Below, piece by piece: positions 2 through 10,407 of a stretch of 10,513 nt of DNA (its first letter is position 1; each line of letters begins with the position of its first letter). The notes under the pieces are model-generated. The model was given only the letters and a program-made list of their open reading frames with translations, was not told the DNA's origin and ran no database searches. Position numbers and translations under genes: made by a program. The stretch covers positions 1 to 10,513 of the IMG/VR virus record IMGVR_UViG_3300005977_000041; one strand, given 5' to 3'.

Positions 2-112
2 CCTCAGCCTTACGCGAAACAAGTAGATTCAATAAATCAAAAATTTAAAGAAGATGAGAATTTAAATTTAGATAATTTAGAAGAAGAAATGGAGGGAATA
101 AAAGATGAGTGA
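2..112 (+). CDS. 3' end of a CDS entering from the left edge (partial; ...PQPYAKQVDSINQKFKEDENLNLDNLEEEMEGIKDE*)
   Basis: Frame 2 is open from the window edge to TGA at 110-112. It overlaps the next ATG (105) by 8 nt and contains that gene's GGAGG RBS, typical operon coupling. Confidence 0.6.
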   Translation, partial: PQPYAKQVDSINQKFKEDENLNLDNLEEEMEGIKDE

Positions 113-332
113 AATAACTCTTATTCTAACTATAATTTCAACATTTATAACTACATTATTTGCGATTGTTCAACTTTATCTCAAAATTAAAAATGCATTG
201 AAAGAGGCAGTTAAAGAAATTGTAAACTCCGAATTGCAAAATTTAAAAATAGAAATTGAAGAATTGAAAATAAATCAGAATGAATTAAAACAACAAATTG
301 AAGAAATAAAAATAAGACTAGGTAAAACTTGA
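105..332 (+). CDS. Small membrane-anchored coiled-coil protein (75 aa)
   Basis: Hydrophobic N-terminal helix (ITLILTIISTFITTLFAIVQLYL) followed by heptad-rich C-terminus; GGAGG upstream. Confidence 0.85.
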   Translation: MSEITLILTIISTFITTLFAIVQLYLKIKNALKEAVKEIVNSELQNLKIEIEELKINQNELKQQIEEIKIRLGKT

Positions 333-1071: not shown

Positions 1072-2079
1072 TCATTCTAAAAATCTGACATATAAATTTT
1101 CTATATTATATCTCTTAGCTAATTCTTTTAGATTTCTACTTCTTTCATCTCTATCTTTTAATTCTGAAGCTATCAATATTGCATTTACCATGTCATGAAT
1201 GTCAAATTTGTGAATTTTCCATTTTTGTCCATGAGTTTTATCATAATATTCCTCAATCTCTGAAGATTTAATTAGTAAATTCCATTGCCATCTAGTAAAT
1301 TCATCAAATGGCGGCATTAGTTGATGAATGACTGGAGTTCCCATGGCCATGCTTTCTAGAACCGGCATTCCGAAACCTTCCGTTCCTGAAGGAACTATTA
1401 CAAAATCCATAACTTTATAGAATGCAAAAATGTATTCTCTCGGATTATACCCAAATTCGCTAACAAAATGCACATTTTCGGGAACTTCAAAATCTTTAAA
1501 TGCTTTATGAGAAATCACAAAGAAATGCACTTTTTTGGCTAATTCTGGAATTTTAGTATTTATCTCCTGAAAAACTCTTATCATAAGATCCATATTCTTT
1601 CTTTTAGTTAGACCTGAAACTATTCCAAATTTTATTGTATCTGGAAAATCTTTATCTATTTTTTGTTTCAATTGAATAGCTAATTGTTCAGCTTTTTCTA
1701 CAATTTCAAAATTTATACCATGGAAAACTGGCAATTCAACATTTAAACCGACCTCTTGCAAATTTTGAGCTGTAAACTTTGAATTTGGTATAAATATTAT
1801 ATTTTCTAATAGATATTGATTTATAATATTTAAATTAGGCTGACCGTCACAAGTTGTATAAAAATACTTAATTCCGCGAAATTCATGAAATGCATACAAA
1901 TATGGATTTAGAGATGGGGGATGAAACGGCATAAAAATTATTAATTTATCAGATTGTGGAATTAAATATGGATTTGTAGAAATTGTTACAATTTCTCCAT
2001 TTTTTCTTAGAACTTGTGCAATATCTTCCGATACATTTCTTATAGATGAGTAATTCATAGTTAAAATTACGGTTTTCAT
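1072..2079 (-). CDS. Glycosyltransferase, GT-B fold family 4 (rudivirus ORF335-like)
   Basis: E-X7-E motif EGFGMPVLE followed by SMAMGTPVI; RKN motif; 335 aa and position near the MCP match the SIRV core. Confidence 0.95.
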   Translation of the reverse strand: MKTVILTMNYSSIRNVSEDIAQVLRKNGEIVTISTNPYLIPQSDKLIIFMPFHPPSLNPYLYAFHEFRGIKYFYTTCDGQPNLNIINQYLLENIIFIPNSKFTAQNLQEVGLNVELPVFHGINFEIVEKAEQLAIQLKQKIDKDFPDTIKFGIVSGLTKRKNMDLMIRVFQEINTKIPELAKKVHFFVISHKAFKDFEVPENVHFVSEFGYNPREYIFAFYKVMDFVIVPSGTEGFGMPVLESMAMGTPVIHQLMPPFDEFTRWQWNLLIKSSEIEEYYDKTHGQKWKIHKFDIHDMVNAILIASELKDRDERSRNLKELAKRYNIENLYVRFLE

Positions 2080-3074: not shown

Positions 3075-3392
3075 ATGAGTGATTTTGCAAAATATGAGTG
3101 TAGAAAATATACAGTTCAAATTTTTAAATGGTTGAAAAGTCGTTATCCTGACAATGTTTATGATTTTCTAGTTTTAGAAGATGAGAACTTAGTAACTATA
3201 AAAATTATAATGAATGTAACAATAAAATTTTATGAAAAAAGAGGTCTAGGAATTGTAAATTATATAATTAAAACTTTTAGACGTCCAGAATTAATAAAAA
3301 TAAATTGGAGATATAATAGAAATATGTTTAATATTGTTGTCTTTTGTGACGAAGTTAGTAAGAGTATAAATTTGTCAGAAAACGAAAAATAA
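3075..3392 (+). CDS. Hypothetical protein (105 aa)
   Basis: ORF track; TATA-TGTCA promoter at leaderless spacing. Confidence 0.8.
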   Translation: MSDFAKYECRKYTVQIFKWLKSRYPDNVYDFLVLEDENLVTIKIIMNVTIKFYEKRGLGIVNYIIKTFRRPELIKINWRYNRNMFNIVVFCDEVSKSINLSENEK

Positions 3393-3404
3393 GAATGATA
3401 AAGT

Positions 3405-3680
3405 ATGGGCAAATTAGCTTTTAGGTTATATATTTCTATAATGCTTTCAATTGTAATACTTAATATACTTTTAATATTTTCTGAAGGAATTTTATCTAAA
3501 AATCTACAAAATATAGTTTTATATTCCGCAATTACATCAATTTTATTAGCAATAATTTTCACATGGATAATAGATTTGATAGATGATTTAGATACAAGAA
3601 TTAATAAACTTGAACTAGAAATTGAAAGATTAAAAAGAGAAAGAAGACAAGAAATATATATGTCAGATAACGAAAAATAA
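3405..3680 (+). CDS. Two-TM membrane protein with C-terminal coiled coil (paralog 1, 91 aa)
   Basis: Two hydrophobic helices then DTRINKLELEIERLKR. Confidence 0.85.
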   Translation: MGKLAFRLYISIMLSIVILNILLIFSEGILSKNLQNIVLYSAITSILLAIIFTWIIDLIDDLDTRINKLELEIERLKRERRQEIYMSDNEK

Positions 3681-3692
3681 AGATGAGAAAAA

Positions 3693-3935
3693 ATGGAAAG
3701 AGAATTTCGTGAAATAATAGTTTTCTTAATTTTTTTAGCTTTAATGTCTTTAGCTTTAATAGTCATGTCATTAGGAATTCTTGTAAAAAATATGCCAATA
3801 GTTATAATATCAACATTTTTTGCATCTGGAATTTTTGCAATTATATATGTAGCAATTTATGATATCTTTGCAGATATTTATGATGAAATTGATGAACTTA
3901 AAGCAGAAATTGAAAGATTAAAAAGAAAGAAATGA
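3693..3935 (+). CDS. Two-TM membrane protein with C-terminal coiled coil (paralog 2, 80 aa)
   Basis: Two hydrophobic helices then YDEIDELKAEIERLKR; colinear with paralog 1. Confidence 0.85.
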   Translation: MEREFREIIVFLIFLALMSLALIVMSLGILVKNMPIVIISTFFASGIFAIIYVAIYDIFADIYDEIDELKAEIERLKRKK

Positions 3936-4005
3936 CTAGAAATATATTTGTAAAAAAATGAAAAATAAAAAAATATTTTTTGCTTAATTTTCTCTTTTAT
4001 TTTTA

Positions 4006-4453: not shown

Positions 4454-4741
4454 ATGACACTAAGTGCAGATGCATTAGAAGGTTTTTTAGTACTAATGGG
4501 CGTATTGATAGGCTCATATGTTGTTGGAGAAATAGTATATCTCTACAATCAAAAGCAAGCAAATCAATCATTCCAAATTGCAGTAGATCAAATGACAAAA
4601 TCTACAATTTCAGCGATTGAATCAATAAAGGATACCACTACACTTGGCGTTAATGCACTCTTGAATATGGATACTCTTTCAGATGTAAATGCATTGGCAC
4701 AGAAAAAGCAAAGTTCTCAATCGCAAACACAAAGTAAATAA
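4454..4741 (+). CDS. Virus-associated pyramid protein PVAP (SIRV2 P98 / STIV C92 family)
   Basis: N-terminal TM plus GEIVYLYN.KQ.N..F..A.DQM.KST..AIESIKDTT..G.NALLNMDTL.DVN.LA, the P98 signature. Confidence 0.95.
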   Translation: MTLSADALEGFLVLMGVLIGSYVVGEIVYLYNQKQANQSFQIAVDQMTKSTISAIESIKDTTTLGVNALLNMDTLSDVNALAQKKQSSQSQTQSK

Positions 4742-4742
4742 T

Positions 4743-5087
4743 TTATTTTTGATTTTTTAACATATAAGTTAAAACTTTTTTTATATCTTTTTTTGTTTTT
4801 GGAACTAATTCAATTCTGATATCTGAATGTGGAGGCATTTTTTCATGAACTCTAGAATAATCTAAACGTTTATTCGTAAAAATAAGAACATGATAATGTA
4901 GACCATGAAATTTTGTTGTATATTCTTTAACTGAAAAAATATGAGCTGATGAGTCATGATTATACACATATTGCCGAAATTTTTTATAGATTGGAATCAC
5001 AGAATTATATCGATAATTCGTAGAAATTGTAACAAAATAAGTATAACTATAAAGAAAATGATAGCTAAAAACTTTTTTACCGTTCAC
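4743..5087 (-). CDS. rep: HUH-superfamily Rep endonuclease (SIRV ORF119 family)
   Basis: Motif I FVTIS, HUH motif GLHYHVLI, YxxK motif YMLK; GTG start at leaderless spacing from a TATA-TGTCA promoter. Confidence 0.93.
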   Translation of the reverse strand: MNGKKVFSYHFLYSYTYFVTISTNYRYNSVIPIYKKFRQYVYNHDSSAHIFSVKEYTTKFHGLHYHVLIFTNKRLDYSRVHEKMPPHSDIRIELVPKTKKDIKKVLTYMLKNQK

Positions 5088-8433: not shown

Positions 8434-8682
8434 TTATTGTTTTAAGTAAACTCTTTGCTTTGAACGACCGCTTTCCGGATTAAGTTCATAACGAATTTCT
8501 ATCAGCCCTTTTTTCTCTAAATTCTGTAACCTCTTATTGACAACTCCATCGTACTTACTAGCCCACGAAAAATGCCGAATAACTTCATCCTTCCATATTC
8601 CATTTGGAAACTGACTCAAAAAATTCAATACTGCTTTTTCTTTTCTCCCGATTCGAATTTTTTTCTTTTCTGTCTGACTCAT
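8434..8682 (-). CDS. Winged helix-turn-helix DNA-binding protein (82 aa)
   Basis: EKAVLNFL...VNKRLQNLEKKGLIEIRY...GRSKQRVYLK is a wHTH pattern. ATG 8682 preferred because the track's extension runs through the promoter. Confidence 0.85.
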   Translation of the reverse strand: MSQTEKKKIRIGRKEKAVLNFLSQFPNGIWKDEVIRHFSWASKYDGVVNKRLQNLEKKGLIEIRYELNPESGRSKQRVYLKQ

Positions 8683-8729
8683 TTTATCACTAATATCTAA
8701 TATGCAAAAACTTATATTTAAAGTTTTCT
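8682..8729 (-). promoter_or_regulatory. Conserved strong promoter/RBS block, copy 1
   Basis: AGAAAA-C-TTTAAATATAAGTTTTT...AGTGA; 42/48 identical to 9694-9741. Confidence 0.85.
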
Positions 8730-8795
8730 TCAAACTTTTACGTTTTCATTTTACGTTATCTAAATTCCTTCAAATTAGAAATAGTATGACAAACT

Positions 8796-8950
8796 TGAAA
8801 AAAATAAAACAAAAAAATAGAAAATAGAAAGTTAAAACTAAAAAAGAAAAAAATTAACTTTATTTTTGCAAAACATCAAAATAAGAAGCAGAAAAATGTT
8901 ACGTAAAAAATGAAAAAATCGAAAAATAAAAAAGAAAGATAAAATCGACA
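8796..8950 (-). terminator. Long A-rich spacer (U-rich 3' tail of the upstream minus-strand gene)
   Basis: Repeated A4-A7 runs immediately 3' of the stop at 8951. Confidence 0.55.
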
Positions 8951-9331
8951 TTACTCTTTAATTAAATCAATTGGATAATGTTTTTTCAAAATATAATATA
9001 ATTTGAAAAATATCGGCTCAGCATAATCAATATTTGATTCTGGTAATTTTTTCAAAATGTTAATAATATCTTCCGAAACATCGTATTCTTTAAAATATCT
9101 TAATTTTAAAACATTTTTGATAATTGAATAATCGTAAAAATAATATGCTTTATTATTTAAAACAAGAAGACATTTATATCCATTACTATCAGGAAAACTA
9201 GTAATATATTTTGTTTCATAATCAGAAACAAAAATTATAGCATTAATTAAATGATCATCTGTAATCTTTCTTAATTTTTCAAAAGTATTTTTTATATCTT
9301 CATCATATATTTGAACTTTATTTTCACTCAT
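8951..9331 (-). CDS. Hypothetical protein (126 aa)
   Basis: ATG 9331 preceded by GGAGG and a TTTATA-TTTGTCA promoter; the track's TTG start at 9352 is less likely. Confidence 0.8.
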   Translation of the reverse strand: MSENKVQIYDEDIKNTFEKLRKITDDHLINAIIFVSDYETKYITSFPDSNGYKCLLVLNNKAYYFYDYSIIKNVLKLRYFKEYDVSEDIINILKKLPESNIDYAEPIFFKLYYILKKHYPIDLIKE

Positions 9332-9435
9332 TTTCTTTCCTCCAAAAAACAACTAACTAGATATGACAAATATAAAAACATCTTTGGCTTTCAGTTTCAA
9401 AATTTCTTAAAATGGCAGAATTATTATTTGAAATT

Positions 9436-9523
9436 TGAAAAAAATTATTGATAAAAATAGATAATAAAGACAACAAAAATATAAAAATAAAAGAAAAAAT
9501 TGAAAATTAAAAAAAGAATAACT
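9436..9523 (-). terminator. A-rich spacer (U-rich 3' tail of the Gp1-like gene)
   Basis: A-runs 3' of the stop at 9524. Confidence 0.5.
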
Positions 9524-9691
9524 TTACCAACAATCAGACATATACTTCTTGACTTTTTTCTCACTAATTCCTAAAAATTGAGCTATTTGTTGAATTGAAT
9601 AACCTTGTTTTATTAATTGATGAACTAACGAAACTTCATCATCTCTTGAACTTATATAATATCTTGAATTTCCGACTTGTACGACTTTCAT
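9524..9691 (-). CDS. Rudivirus Gp1-like HTH DNA-binding protein (55 aa; SIRV1 ORF55/56a, SIRV2 ORF83 family), not in ORF track
   Basis: Manual translation MKVVQVGNSRYYISSRDDEVSLVHQLIKQGYSIQQIAQFLGISEKKVKKYMSDCW; QV...RYY..S.DD.VS..H.L.K.GY..QQIA..LG.SE.KV..Y...C signature; strong promoter and GGTGA RBS. Confidence 0.92.
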   Translation of the reverse strand: MKVVQVGNSRYYISSRDDEVSLVHQLIKQGYSIQQIAQFLGISEKKVKKYMSDCW

Positions 9692-9693
9692 CT

Positions 9694-9741
9694 TTTTATC
9701 ACCAATATAACATATGTAAAAACTTATATTTAAACTTTTCT
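9694..9741 (-). promoter_or_regulatory. Conserved strong promoter/RBS block, copy 2
   Basis: AGAAAA-G-TTTAAATATAAGTTTTTACATATG...TTGGTGA. Confidence 0.85.
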
Positions 9742-9831
9742 CTCTCTTTTTATCTTTTGATTTTTCGAAACTTTTAACGTTAAACCTCTTAACTTACAAT
9801 TTCTGTTAACTTTGAAATTTGATTTGAAAAC

Positions 9832-9965
9832 TGAAAAAAATTAAACATAGAAATAGAAAATAATGAGAATAAAACTAAAAAGCTAAAAAATAAAATTATA
9901 AAACTAGAAAAATAGAAAATATAAAATAGAAGATAATAAAAATAAAAATAAAAAAAACAATTAAC
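9832..9965 (-). terminator. Long A-rich spacer with AAAATA(G)/AAAACTA short repeats
   Basis: About 130 nt almost entirely A-runs, 3' of the stop at 9966. Confidence 0.55.
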
Positions 9966-10304
9966 TTACATTATTTGCATGCTTTTCCAGCCAACAGGGT
10001 AACTAAAAACGTATACTATTTGTTGTTTTTGACTTTGTGAATTATATTTAATTCTTTCTTCAATCAACACTATTATTGTATCGCTTTTTGGAATAATCGC
10101 ATATTCAAATTCTCTAGTTTCATCATTAATGTCATTAGTACTCATTAATATCAATTCATATTCACCATAAACTTGTCTAATCTTTATATACCCATCTCTT
10201 CCTCTGTACTCCTTAACTATCAAAAAATATTTGGACTCATCTTTGCCTTCATCAATCGCCTTCTTTATTAATTCACTGATTTGTTCATCAGTTAAGTTTT
10301 TCAT
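9966..10304 (-). CDS. Hypothetical protein (112 aa), candidate early gene
   Basis: ORF track; GGTGA RBS and promoter block copy 3. Confidence 0.85.
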   Translation of the reverse strand: MKNLTDEQISELIKKAIDEGKDESKYFLIVKEYRGRDGYIKIRQVYGEYELILMSTNDINDETREFEYAIIPKSDTIIVLIEERIKYNSQSQKQQIVYVFSYPVGWKSMQIM

Positions 10305-10308
10305 CTTT

Positions 10309-10353
10309 TCACCAATTTTACATATGTATCTCCCCCTTTATAAAGTTTTCTCT
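10309..10353 (-). promoter_or_regulatory. Conserved strong promoter/RBS block, copy 3 (diverged middle)
   Basis: Ungapped alignment with 9699-9743: AGAGAAAA-C-TTTATA...TACATATG...ATTGGTGA. Confidence 0.75.
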
Positions 10354-10363
10354 ACTTTTTTAC

Positions 10364-10407
10364 ATCTCTATCTCTCTATCTCTCTCCATTAACTCTCTCT
10401 ATAGAGA
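10364..10407. repeat. TC/TCTCTA simple repeat with palindrome TCTCTATAGAGA (10396-10407)
   Basis: Seen directly in sequence. Confidence 0.6.

What the first reader, a model, noticed from the sequence alone, without database searches (positions are those of the whole stretch)
3373..3968. Exact 288-bp tandem duplication of a promoter plus 2-TM/coiled-coil gene unit, with strongly diverged membrane segments
Seen: TGTCAGAAAACGAAAAATAA (3373), TGTCAGATAACGAAAAATAA (3661) and degenerate TGTAAAAAAATGAAAAATAA (3949) recur every 288 bp. ATGs (3405/3693) and an identical 22-mer encoding EIERLKR (3617/3905) share the same offset, with no net indel. The boundary repeat is both the end of the previous gene (SENEK*/SDNEK*) and the TATA-TGTCA promoter of the next. 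Copy 2 is shortened by AGA to TGA at 3933, and the third, gene-less repeat has lost TGTCA. TM regions are highly diverged while the coiled coil is conserved. Inference: a gene accordion producing diversified membrane proteins that hetero-oligomerise, for example in superinfection exclusion or receptor/membrane-defence interference.
Basis: partly seen in the sequence, partly recalled or inferred. Interest (0 to 1): 0.7.

Follow-up and report, generated by a model that had tools for sequence, protein, structure and literature searches.

The report
Tandem membrane-protein paralogs in a rudivirus
A Yellowstone rod-shaped archaeal virus carries two old, diverged tandem copies of a small membrane-protein gene, each with its own promoter; close relatives gain or lose one copy exactly at the repeated promoter, and the protein's function is still unknown.

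Summary
The window is a usarudivirus fragment (88% to SIRV8/9). Positions 3373-3968 hold two 288-nt units in exact register with no net indel, but only 58% nucleotide identity. They encode a 91-aa "A" and an 80-aa "B" protein, both full-length members of PHROG 9310 (function unknown). Each is a two-transmembrane helical hairpin whose second helix continues into a heptad-patterned C-terminal helix.

The 20-mer boundary repeat is the known rudiviral promoter (TATA plus GTC, 32 nt before each ATG) plus a family-specific leader. The tail codons of the upstream gene overlap it.

The pair is old: the two clades are deep and each is conserved. B-type omega is 0.32 overall, 0.10 in the C-helix and about 1 in TM2.

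Copy number does vary, but only between one and two. Eight genomes or contigs carry A+B, 19 carry B only, 3 carry an A-like gene only, and none carries three. SIRV5 minus its 276-nt A unit equals SIRV6 with zero mismatches over 3.1 kb, and the breakpoint lies in a 28-nt perfect promoter repeat.

This is a one-or-two-copy cassette polymorphism in a cassette hot spot, not an expanding accordion. Hetero-oligomerisation and superinfection exclusion are untested. A g/e' charge swap hints at homotypic assembly instead.

The parts
3075..3392 (+). Upstream 105-aa gene (homolog of SIRV2 ORF103c, PHROG 8699). Its last codons (...INLSENEK*) run through boundary repeat 1.
3364..3404 (+). Boundary repeat 1: TATA-like box, TGTCA (GTC element) at 3373, and the family-specific leader. 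Inferred promoter and 5' leader of gene A.
   Evidence: In SIRV8/9 and V60 the same element is intergenic, so it is conserved as a regulatory element and not as coding sequence.
3405..3680 (+). Gene A, 91 aa: two TM helices, conserved loop S-x-G-I-L-x-K-N, and a C-terminal heptad helix. An 11-residue tail overlaps the promoter of gene B.
3617..3638 (+). 22-mer encoding EIERLKR, identical to 3905-3926.
   Evidence: Given codon bias, identical codon choice has P about 0.036.
3652..3692 (+). Boundary repeat 2: TATA-like box, TGTCA at 3661, and leader. Inferred promoter of gene B, lying inside the 3' end of gene A.
3693..3935 (+). Gene B, 80 aa: a paralog of A with a stop at codon 81 (TGA in register with AGA of A).
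3940..3968 (+). Boundary repeat 3: a relic of the tail/promoter/leader with GTC lost (TGTAA). No gene follows on this strand.
3976..3981 (+). First run of 5 or more T after the pair (T6), a candidate archaeal termination signal. There is none between 3373 and 3700, so A transcripts probably read into B (inferred).

Best explanation
Positions 3373-3968 hold an old tandem pair of paralogous cassettes. Each cassette is a rudiviral GTC-class promoter, a short family-specific leader, and a gene for a small membrane protein of PHROG 9310.

The protein is a helical hairpin. TM1 is followed by a tight conserved turn, and TM2 runs without a break into a C-terminal helix of about 25 residues with a 3-4 hydrophobic heptad. 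Rudivirus virions have no membrane, so the proteins most likely sit in the host cytoplasmic membrane. There they would form parallel oligomers held by TM2 (invariant S45-xxx-A49) and the cytoplasmic coiled coil. Each paralog would probably pair with itself.

The promoter and leader of each downstream cassette is overprinted by the dispensable C-terminal tail of the upstream gene. The units are therefore bounded by 20-28-nt direct repeats. Recombination or slippage between these repeats removes (or adds) exactly one unit. This gives a one-or-two-copy polymorphism in which the A gene is the optional one.

Shown here: the paralogy, promoter motif, domain-specific constraint, exact excision and narrow distribution. 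Inferred: transcription, topology, homo-oligomerisation and the host-membrane site.

The biological role is not established. My ranking:
- about 0.35: an accessory factor acting on the cell envelope, such as blocking entry or superinfection or altering surface structures;
- about 0.2: a viroporin- or holin-like permeabiliser or timer;
- the rest: other or unknown.
For: - Origin: 88% nucleotide identity to SIRV9/8 over 92% of the window.
- Unit identity 58% in exact register, z about 8. Proteins E 2e-12, and both are full-length hits to phrog_9310 at E 4e-36 and 1.5e-41.
- AlphaFold model of A: helices 3-31 and 34-90, mean pLDDT 81. Hydropathy shows two TM segments.
- Heptad positions 55, 59, 62, 66, 69, 73 and 76 are hydrophobic in both paralogs. 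The only PDB sequence hits are designed coiled coils.
- Promoter: motif enrichment and its fixed distance to start codons, plus the literature on the GTC element.
- The repeat is conserved even where it is non-coding.
- Two deep clades with 100/100 support. Every A-bearing genome has a B of one subclade, and A and B co-diverge.
- B-type omega: 0.32 overall, 0.10 C-helix, 0.37 N-terminus plus TM1, 0.97 TM2 (NG86 values).
- SIRV5 minus 276 nt equals SIRV6 with 0 mismatches in 3127 nt. The breakpoint lies in a 28-nt perfect repeat. SIRV9 and L020 show the same geometry.
- Charge swap: A and A-like proteins have R/K65 and E70 in 23/23; B proteins have E65 in 37/41 and K/R70 in 40/41.
- Family size: 42 clusters among 5.8 billion proteins, and 8 clusters among 1.84 billion representatives.
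Against: - There are no expression data, so promoters and read-through are motif-based inferences.
- Topology and oligomerisation are predicted only, and only a monomer could be modelled.
- The charge swap is a single evolutionary event, and 4 of 41 B proteins carry K/R at 65.
- With only five A-type nucleotide sequences, the A C-helix shows pN/pS near 1, unlike B.
- In-situ duplication cannot be told apart from stacking of two alleles (see rivals).
- Icelandic SIRV1/2 lack the family at this position, so it is not essential to the rudiviral cycle.
- Nothing links it to a particular host target.
Confidence: 0.6

Rival explanations
1. Active gene accordion. The array expands and contracts rapidly under selection, and new copies diversify in their membrane segments to track a changing host or competitor target.
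For: Copy number differs between very close relatives, and the change is repeat-mediated. TM2 of the B type evolves at omega about 1, and NG86 pairwise pN/pS is 2.2. A gene-less third promoter/leader after B could be the scar of a lost third unit.
Against: No array of more than two genes occurs in about 30 genomes and contigs, and no contig has more than three boundary repeats. The copies are about 30% identical and fall in two deep, internally conserved clades. A and B are no more alike within a genome than between genomes. Overall omega is 0.32, and TM2 is not significantly above 1.
Confidence: 0.1
2. Allele stacking rather than in-situ duplication. A-like and B genes diverged as alternative occupants of the same slot in different rudivirus lineages. 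Unequal recombination between co-infecting genomes, at the shared promoter core, then placed them in tandem.
For: A-like 80-aa genes occupy the slot alone in other rudivirus contigs (L055, L033, L034). The slot is a cassette hot spot with at least 8 architectures, and nearly every cassette begins with the same TATA-TGTCA core. The junction repeats are near-identical while the coding regions are saturated.
Against: The junction is conserved by function in all genomes, so its identity says little about age. The same pattern arises from one old duplication followed by reciprocal losses. Equal unit length and register fit both models.
Confidence: 0.3
3. A and B form a functional hetero-oligomer or an antagonist pair, in the manner of a holin and antiholin. 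A would modulate B.
For: All a/d core positions of the C-helix are shared by A and B. A never occurs without B in the sampled usarudiviruses. Probable co-transcription, because no T-run separates them.
Against: The g65/e'70 pairs would be R-K and E-E in a parallel A:B pair, but R-E and E-K in homo-pairs. B functions alone in most genomes. No holin or lysis family matches.
Confidence: 0.15
4. The coding strand is misassigned, and the real gene is the 168-aa antisense ORF at 3260-3766.
For: A stop-free antisense stretch of 171-198 codons is present in the window, SIRV9, SIRV5 and L013.
Against: The antisense frame shares its wobble positions with the sense frame, which is the classic shadow ORF. 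It is broken in L017 (80 codons) and in single-copy genomes. No promoter motif lies upstream of it on the minus strand. The sense genes have conserved lengths, promoters at a fixed distance, and omega 0.10 in the C-helix.
Confidence: 0.02

Closest known systems
PHROG 9310 (hypothetical proteins of Yellowstone SIRV4-11, e.g. SIRV9 ORF21/ORF20 and SIRV8 ORF23/ORF22)
   Same: Both window proteins are full-length members. Gene order and unit length match SIRV8/9.
   Different: The family has no assigned function. I found no paper that describes the tandem paralogy, the promoter-in-tail design or the exact A-unit indel.
Poxvirus-type gene accordion (K3L amplification), from my own knowledge
   Same: Tandem units bounded by direct repeats, with copy number changing by recombination between them.
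   Different: Accordion copies are near-identical, reach many units and collapse again within passages. Here there are two copies at about 30% identity, never more than two, and the pair is older than the sampled lineage.
Class II holins and pinholins of bacteriophages (e.g. phage 21 S68), from my own knowledge
   Same: Size of 80-91 aa, two TM helices joined by a short turn, and a highly charged C-terminus ending in basic residues. Holins are sometimes paired with a related modulator.
   Different: There is no sequence or profile match to any holin or lysis family, no endolysin partner, and rudiviruses exit through PVAP pyramids. SIRV2 lacks the family yet lyses.
PVAP (SIRV2 P98 / STIV C92), encoded 520 nt downstream at 4454-4741
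   Same: A small viral protein of the host membrane with a helical C-terminal part, in the same gene neighbourhood.
   Different: PVAP has one TM helix rather than two. Profile-profile comparison finds nothing (probability 0.1%).
Rudiviral GTC-class promoters (Kessler et al. 2004, as summarised in PMC5569661)
   Same: An A/T-rich TATA-like box directly followed by GTC, seen before A, before B and before most neighbouring cassettes.
   Different: Here the promoter and leader is also the coding tail of the preceding gene, and it acts as the recombination substrate.

Membership tests
PHROG 9310 | Full-length profile match | tested here: met
   A: E 4.2e-36, positions 1-80 of 80. B: E 1.5e-41, positions 1-80 of 80.
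Rudiviral GTC-class promoter | TATA-like box immediately followed by GTC, upstream of the gene | tested here: met
   TGTCA lies 32 nt before both ATGs. The motif occurs 10 times against 2.15 expected, with 0 of 200 shuffles reaching 10, and 7 of 10 sites lie 31-37 nt before an ORF start.
Rudiviral GTC-class promoter | Mapped transcription start | not testable with these tools
   No transcript data are available for this virus.
Gene accordion | Near-identical tandem copies | tested here: not met
   58% nucleotide and about 30% protein identity. Synonymous sites in the TM region are saturated.
Gene accordion | Copy number reaching more than two and varying among close relatives | tested here: not met
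   Only 1 or 2 genes in about 30 genomes and contigs, and at most three boundary repeats per contig.
Gene accordion | Gain or loss of whole units by recombination between flanking direct repeats | tested here: met
   SIRV5 minus 276 nt equals SIRV6 with 0 mismatches in 3127 nt, and the breakpoint lies within a 28-nt perfect repeat.
PVAP (virus-associated pyramid protein) | Sequence or profile homology and a single N-terminal TM helix | tested here: not met
   hhalign probability 0.1%. Two TM helices are predicted.
Class II holin | Small size, two TM helices, charged C-terminus | tested here: met
   80-91 aa, helices 3-31 and 34-90, two hydrophobic segments, C-terminal charges 8+/11- in A and 6+/8- in B.
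Class II holin | Match to a holin or lysis family, or linkage to a lysis cassette | tested here: not met
   No Pfam, PHROG or NCBIfam holin or lysis hit for any family member. The neighbours are the capsid gene, RHH regulators, dut and PVAP.
Class II holin | Membrane permeabilisation on expression | not testable with these tools
   This needs an experiment.
Parallel coiled coil | Continuous 3-4 hydrophobic heptad over at least 3 heptads | tested here: met
   Positions 55, 59, 62, 66, 69, 73 and 76 are hydrophobic in A and B and nearly invariant across the family. PDB sequence hits are SYNZIP coiled coils only.
Parallel coiled coil | Oligomeric state and partner specificity | not testable with these tools
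   Only monomer prediction is offered. The g65/e'70 charge pattern is the sole indirect evidence.
Archaeal-virus early / anti-defence regulon (Bhoobalan-Chitty et al. 2024) | Listed as a putative anti-defence gene or carrying the early regulatory motif | tested here: not met
   The SIRV7/8/9 orthologs do not appear in the paper's supplementary lists. The A and B promoters differ from the palindrome-bearing upstream repeats of the terminal genes in this window.

The most novel reading that the evidence does not exclude
The promoter-in-tail design may be a general plug-and-play system. Each cassette's dispensable C-terminal tail would encode the promoter and leader of the next. Units could then be stacked, swapped or excised at the shared TATA-GTC core without losing expression. 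Under this reading, A and B are deliberately insulated homo-oligomeric membrane paralogs (charge-swapped g/e' pair) that act on different host or competitor targets at the cell envelope, for example as two specificities of entry or superinfection block.
Probability: 0.15. Interest if true: 0.6.

Novelty: new variant of a known kind. Interest (0 to 1): 0.4.

Why it matters
- It gives a clean, sequence-level example of how rudiviruses vary accessory genes. Whole promoter-plus-gene cassettes are gained or lost at conserved promoter repeats in a hot spot between the capsid and pyramid genes.
- It identifies a ready-made natural comparison: SIRV5 and SIRV6 are identical over 3.1 kb of this locus except for gene A. 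That pair could be used to test what an uncharacterised, lineage-restricted membrane-protein family does.
- It yields a specific, testable prediction about paralog insulation, through the 65/70 charge swap.
- It does not by itself reveal a new mechanism or the function.

Tried and rejected
- tblastn of protein A against the phage collection returned only N-terminal fragments, because of the low-complexity filter. I used local HMM searches instead.
- IQ-TREE codon fits did not optimise omega and kappa for the 22-codon TM2 partition. I replaced them with my own GY94 pruning likelihood on the fixed tree.
I did not attempt it by any other route, so substitutions were not mapped to branches.
- Foldseek against the PDB gave nothing below E 4. 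The viral-structure library and a second structure prediction (for B) were unavailable.
- Pfam, NCBIfam and PADLOC gave no hit above threshold.
- Homology to PVAP was rejected.
- Homology to the 75-aa TM-plus-coiled-coil protein at 105-332 was rejected. Only 14 coiled-coil residues align, with probability 12%.
- Ongoing gene conversion between A and B was rejected, because there is no extra within-genome similarity.
- Three IMG/VR hits to the 20-mer (L050, L053, L054) showed no family gene. L053, the one I inspected, is an unrelated phage-like contig in which the 20-mer ends a 310-aa ORF.
- Literature searches found no description of this family or of a rudiviral superinfection-exclusion gene.

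Full report
**Origin of the window.** The window is 88% identical over 92% of its length to Sulfolobus islandicus rod-shaped viruses 9 and 8, which are Usarudivirus isolates from Yellowstone. It is the IMG/VR contig 3300005977_000041. Gene order matches SIRV8/9: glycosyltransferase, major capsid protein, ORF103c-like gene, the two genes of the finding, two RHH regulators, the pyramid protein PVAP, and then the gp17-19 block.

**The observation.** All stated coordinates are correct.
- The 20-mer at 3373 recurs at 3661 (19/20) and at 3949 (17/20).
- The ATGs at 3405 and 3693 and the identical 22-mers at 3617 and 3905 keep the 288-nt offset.
- The B stop (TGA at 3933) is in register with AGA in A.
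- In ungapped register the units are 58% identical, against a background of 32.5% (SD 3.2%). No other offset in the window comes close.
- The proteins align at E 2e-12. Without the C-helix they still align at E 3e-4, with a permutation p of 1.5e-4.
- The signal comes from the inter-helix loop (6/9 identical) and weakly from TM2. TM1 is no longer recognisably similar.

**What the proteins are.** Both are full-length members of PHROG 9310, a family of unknown function. No Pfam, NCBIfam or PADLOC family passes threshold for them or for 24 relatives.
- The AlphaFold model of A, built from a 24-sequence alignment, has mean pLDDT 81. It is a helical hairpin with helix 3-31, a two-residue turn and a continuous helix 34-90. 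Hydropathy gives two TM segments.
- After TM2 the hydrophobic residues fall at 55, 59, 62, 66, 69, 73 and 76. This is a regular 3-4 heptad shared by both paralogs and nearly invariant in the family.
- The only PDB sequence hits are designed coiled coils. Foldseek against the PDB finds nothing.
- S45 and A49 in TM2 (a small-xxx-small pattern) and the loop motif S-x-G-I-L-x-K-N are the other conserved features.
- There is no homology to PVAP.
- The family is tiny. It has 42 clusters at 90% identity among 5.8 billion proteins, and 8 clusters among 1.84 billion representatives read exhaustively. All members are 60-91 aa, and every one whose context I could examine lies on a rudivirus genome or a rudivirus-like contig.

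**The boundary repeat is a promoter.**
- The motif WWWTWTGTCA occurs 10 times in the window against 2.15 expected, and none of 200 shuffles reached 10.
- Seven of the ten sites lie 31-37 nt upstream of an ATG that opens an ORF. Both family genes are at exactly 32 nt.
- A GTC element directly after the TATA box is the published hallmark of SIRV1/2 promoters (Kessler et al. 2004, as summarised in PMC5569661).
- Nearly every cassette of this locus in the related contigs examined has the same core at the same distance. The 20 nt after TGTCA are specific to this family's genes.
- In SIRV8/9 and V60 an extra 48-52-aa gene separates ORF103c from gene A. There the repeat is intergenic yet unchanged. 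It is therefore conserved as a regulatory element, and the ...SENEK tails are overprinted on it.
- The tail is dispensable. B and the A-like proteins stop at codon 81, while one B-type gene (L018) keeps the 91-aa form.
- No run of five or more T lies between A and B. The first is at 3976. A transcripts probably continue through B, but this is inferred.

**Age and selection.**
- A family tree of 63 proteins splits into (A plus A-like) and B with 100/100 support, and about two substitutions per site separate the two clades.
- Within each type, orthologs are 76-100% identical among the isolates, apart from the divergent SIRV11 B copy at 56-63%.
- Every A-bearing genome has a B of one subclade. 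L017 is the most divergent member for both genes, so the pair has been inherited together.
- A and B are no more similar within a genome than between genomes, so there is no ongoing conversion. Given codon bias, the identical 22-mer has P about 0.036. This is suggestive only.
- For 19 unique B-type sequences, a GY94 likelihood on the fixed tree gives these omega values:

| Region | omega | Test against omega = 1 |
|---|---|---|
| Whole gene | 0.32 | p 1e-9 |
| C-helix | 0.10 | p 3e-11 |
| N-terminus plus TM1 | 0.37 | p 8e-4 |
| TM2 | 0.97 | not different |

- NG86 values point the same way. There is strong constraint on the coiled coil and near-neutral change in TM2, but no demonstrated positive selection.

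**Copy number.** Counts come from twelve isolates and about nineteen further contigs.
- Eight carry A+B: the window, SIRV5, 7, 8, 9, L013, L014 and L017.
- Nineteen carry B only.
- Three carry a single A-like gene in the same slot: L055, L033 and L034.
- None carries three genes.
- SIRV5 and SIRV6 are classified in the same species, and their samples came from the same spring 11 days apart. Deleting 276 nt from SIRV5 reproduces the SIRV6 locus with zero mismatches over 3127 nt. The breakpoint can lie anywhere within a 28-nt perfect direct repeat made of the promoter and leader.
- SIRV9 has a 27-nt perfect repeat, and it differs from the single-copy contig L020 by the same 288-nt unit.
- In the window the repeats carry a mismatch, so their perfect runs are only 7 and 12 nt. 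That should make this copy of the pair more stable.

**Context.** The interval between ORF103c and the RHH genes is a cassette hot spot with at least eight architectures. The cassettes are an AbrB-like 52-aa gene, A, B, small Cys-rich proteins, a 41-aa TM peptide, a DNA methyltransferase and dut. SIRV2 has only dut there and no family member.

**Interpretation.**
- The finding is a genuine, old tandem pair of promoter-plus-gene cassettes. Its repeated promoters make the upstream copy facultative.
- It is not an expanding accordion.
- The pair may have arisen by in-situ duplication or by stacking of two alleles from different lineages. This is unresolved, and the A-like singletons keep the second option open.
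- For assembly, the g65/e'70 pair is R/K and E in all 23 A and A-like proteins. In B it is E (37/41) and K/R (40/41). In a parallel bundle this favours A:A and B:B over A:B. The evidence is indirect and rests on one evolutionary event.
- Function remains unknown. The genes are not in the published anti-defence (early-promoter) lists, and they use the GTC promoter class rather than the palindrome-bearing upstream repeats of the terminal genes.
- I rank an envelope-directed accessory role first, and a viroporin- or holin-like role second.

**Novelty and score.** The genes are already deposited as hypothetical proteins and grouped in PHROGs. In the searchable literature I found no description of the paralogy, the promoter-in-tail design, the exact A-unit indel or the charge swap. 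I rate this a new variant of a known kind, namely repeat-mediated cassette copy-number variation of a viral accessory gene. Interest is 0.4.

Noticed in passing
L001 (SIRV9) 3325-3483; L002 (SIRV8) 1298-1456; L011 (V60) 1286-1432; absent from the window between 3392 and 3405: A 48-52-aa soluble gene sits between ORF103c and gene A in SIRV8/9, V60 and many contigs, but is missing here. The SIRV8/9 proteins are the arCOG07934, AbrB-like, possibly antitoxin-related family discussed in PMC11065993.
   Followed up: partly
window 3645-3656 versus L004 (SIRV5) and L017: The A unit is 288 nt here and in SIRV8/9, but 276 nt in SIRV5/7 and L017. The difference is a 12-nt (four-codon, RERR) indel. 12-bp indels inside ORFs are a described peculiarity of rudiviruses (PMC4390879).
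   Followed up: partly
window 3260-3766, minus strand: A 168-aa antisense ORF spans the whole A unit. It shares wobble positions with the sense frame, stays open in four relatives and is broken in L017. It is most likely a shadow ORF.
   Followed up: yes
L018 1973-2899 and 3213-3501; L021 3228-3501; L030 835-1095; L027 3246-3413: The same slot in other rudivirus contigs holds a 308-aa DNA methyltransferase-like gene, small Cys-rich proteins and a 41-aa TM peptide. Except for the 41-aa peptide, each sits behind a TATA-TGTCA core. The locus is a cassette hot spot.
   Followed up: partly
window 8679-8755, 9691-9767, 10301-10377 (repeat family D3) and 8778-9952 (D1/D2): Three minus-strand genes near the right end (starts at 8733, 9691 and 10304) share a 77-nt upstream repeat. 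The copies at 9691 and 10304 contain a TTTAAATA-like box, an ACATATGT palindrome and GGTGA. This is a different promoter class from the GTC type, and it resembles the early or anti-defence regulatory sequences of PMC11065993. The 55-aa HTH protein at 9524-9691 is labelled 'terminase small subunit' in PHROGs, which looks like a misnomer.
   Followed up: partly
window 105-332: A 75-aa protein with one TM helix and a coiled coil (PHROG 7330) carries an LKIEIEELK stretch resembling the family's C-helix. Profile comparison aligns only 14 residues (probability 12%), so homology is not supported.
   Followed up: yes
L055 (IMGVR 3300005859_000094) 4520-4762 minus strand; L033 174-416; L034 535-777: A-like 80-aa members combine A-type TM segments with a B-like C-helix and stop position. 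They occur as the only family gene in the slot. They may be mosaics, or they may be closer to the ancestral form.
   Followed up: partly
window 1086-1095, minus strand: Another TATA-TGTCA motif lies inside the 3' end of the glycosyltransferase gene, 49 nt before the 52-aa ORF at 883-1041. Promoters embedded in the preceding gene's end are therefore not unique to the finding.
   Followed up: no
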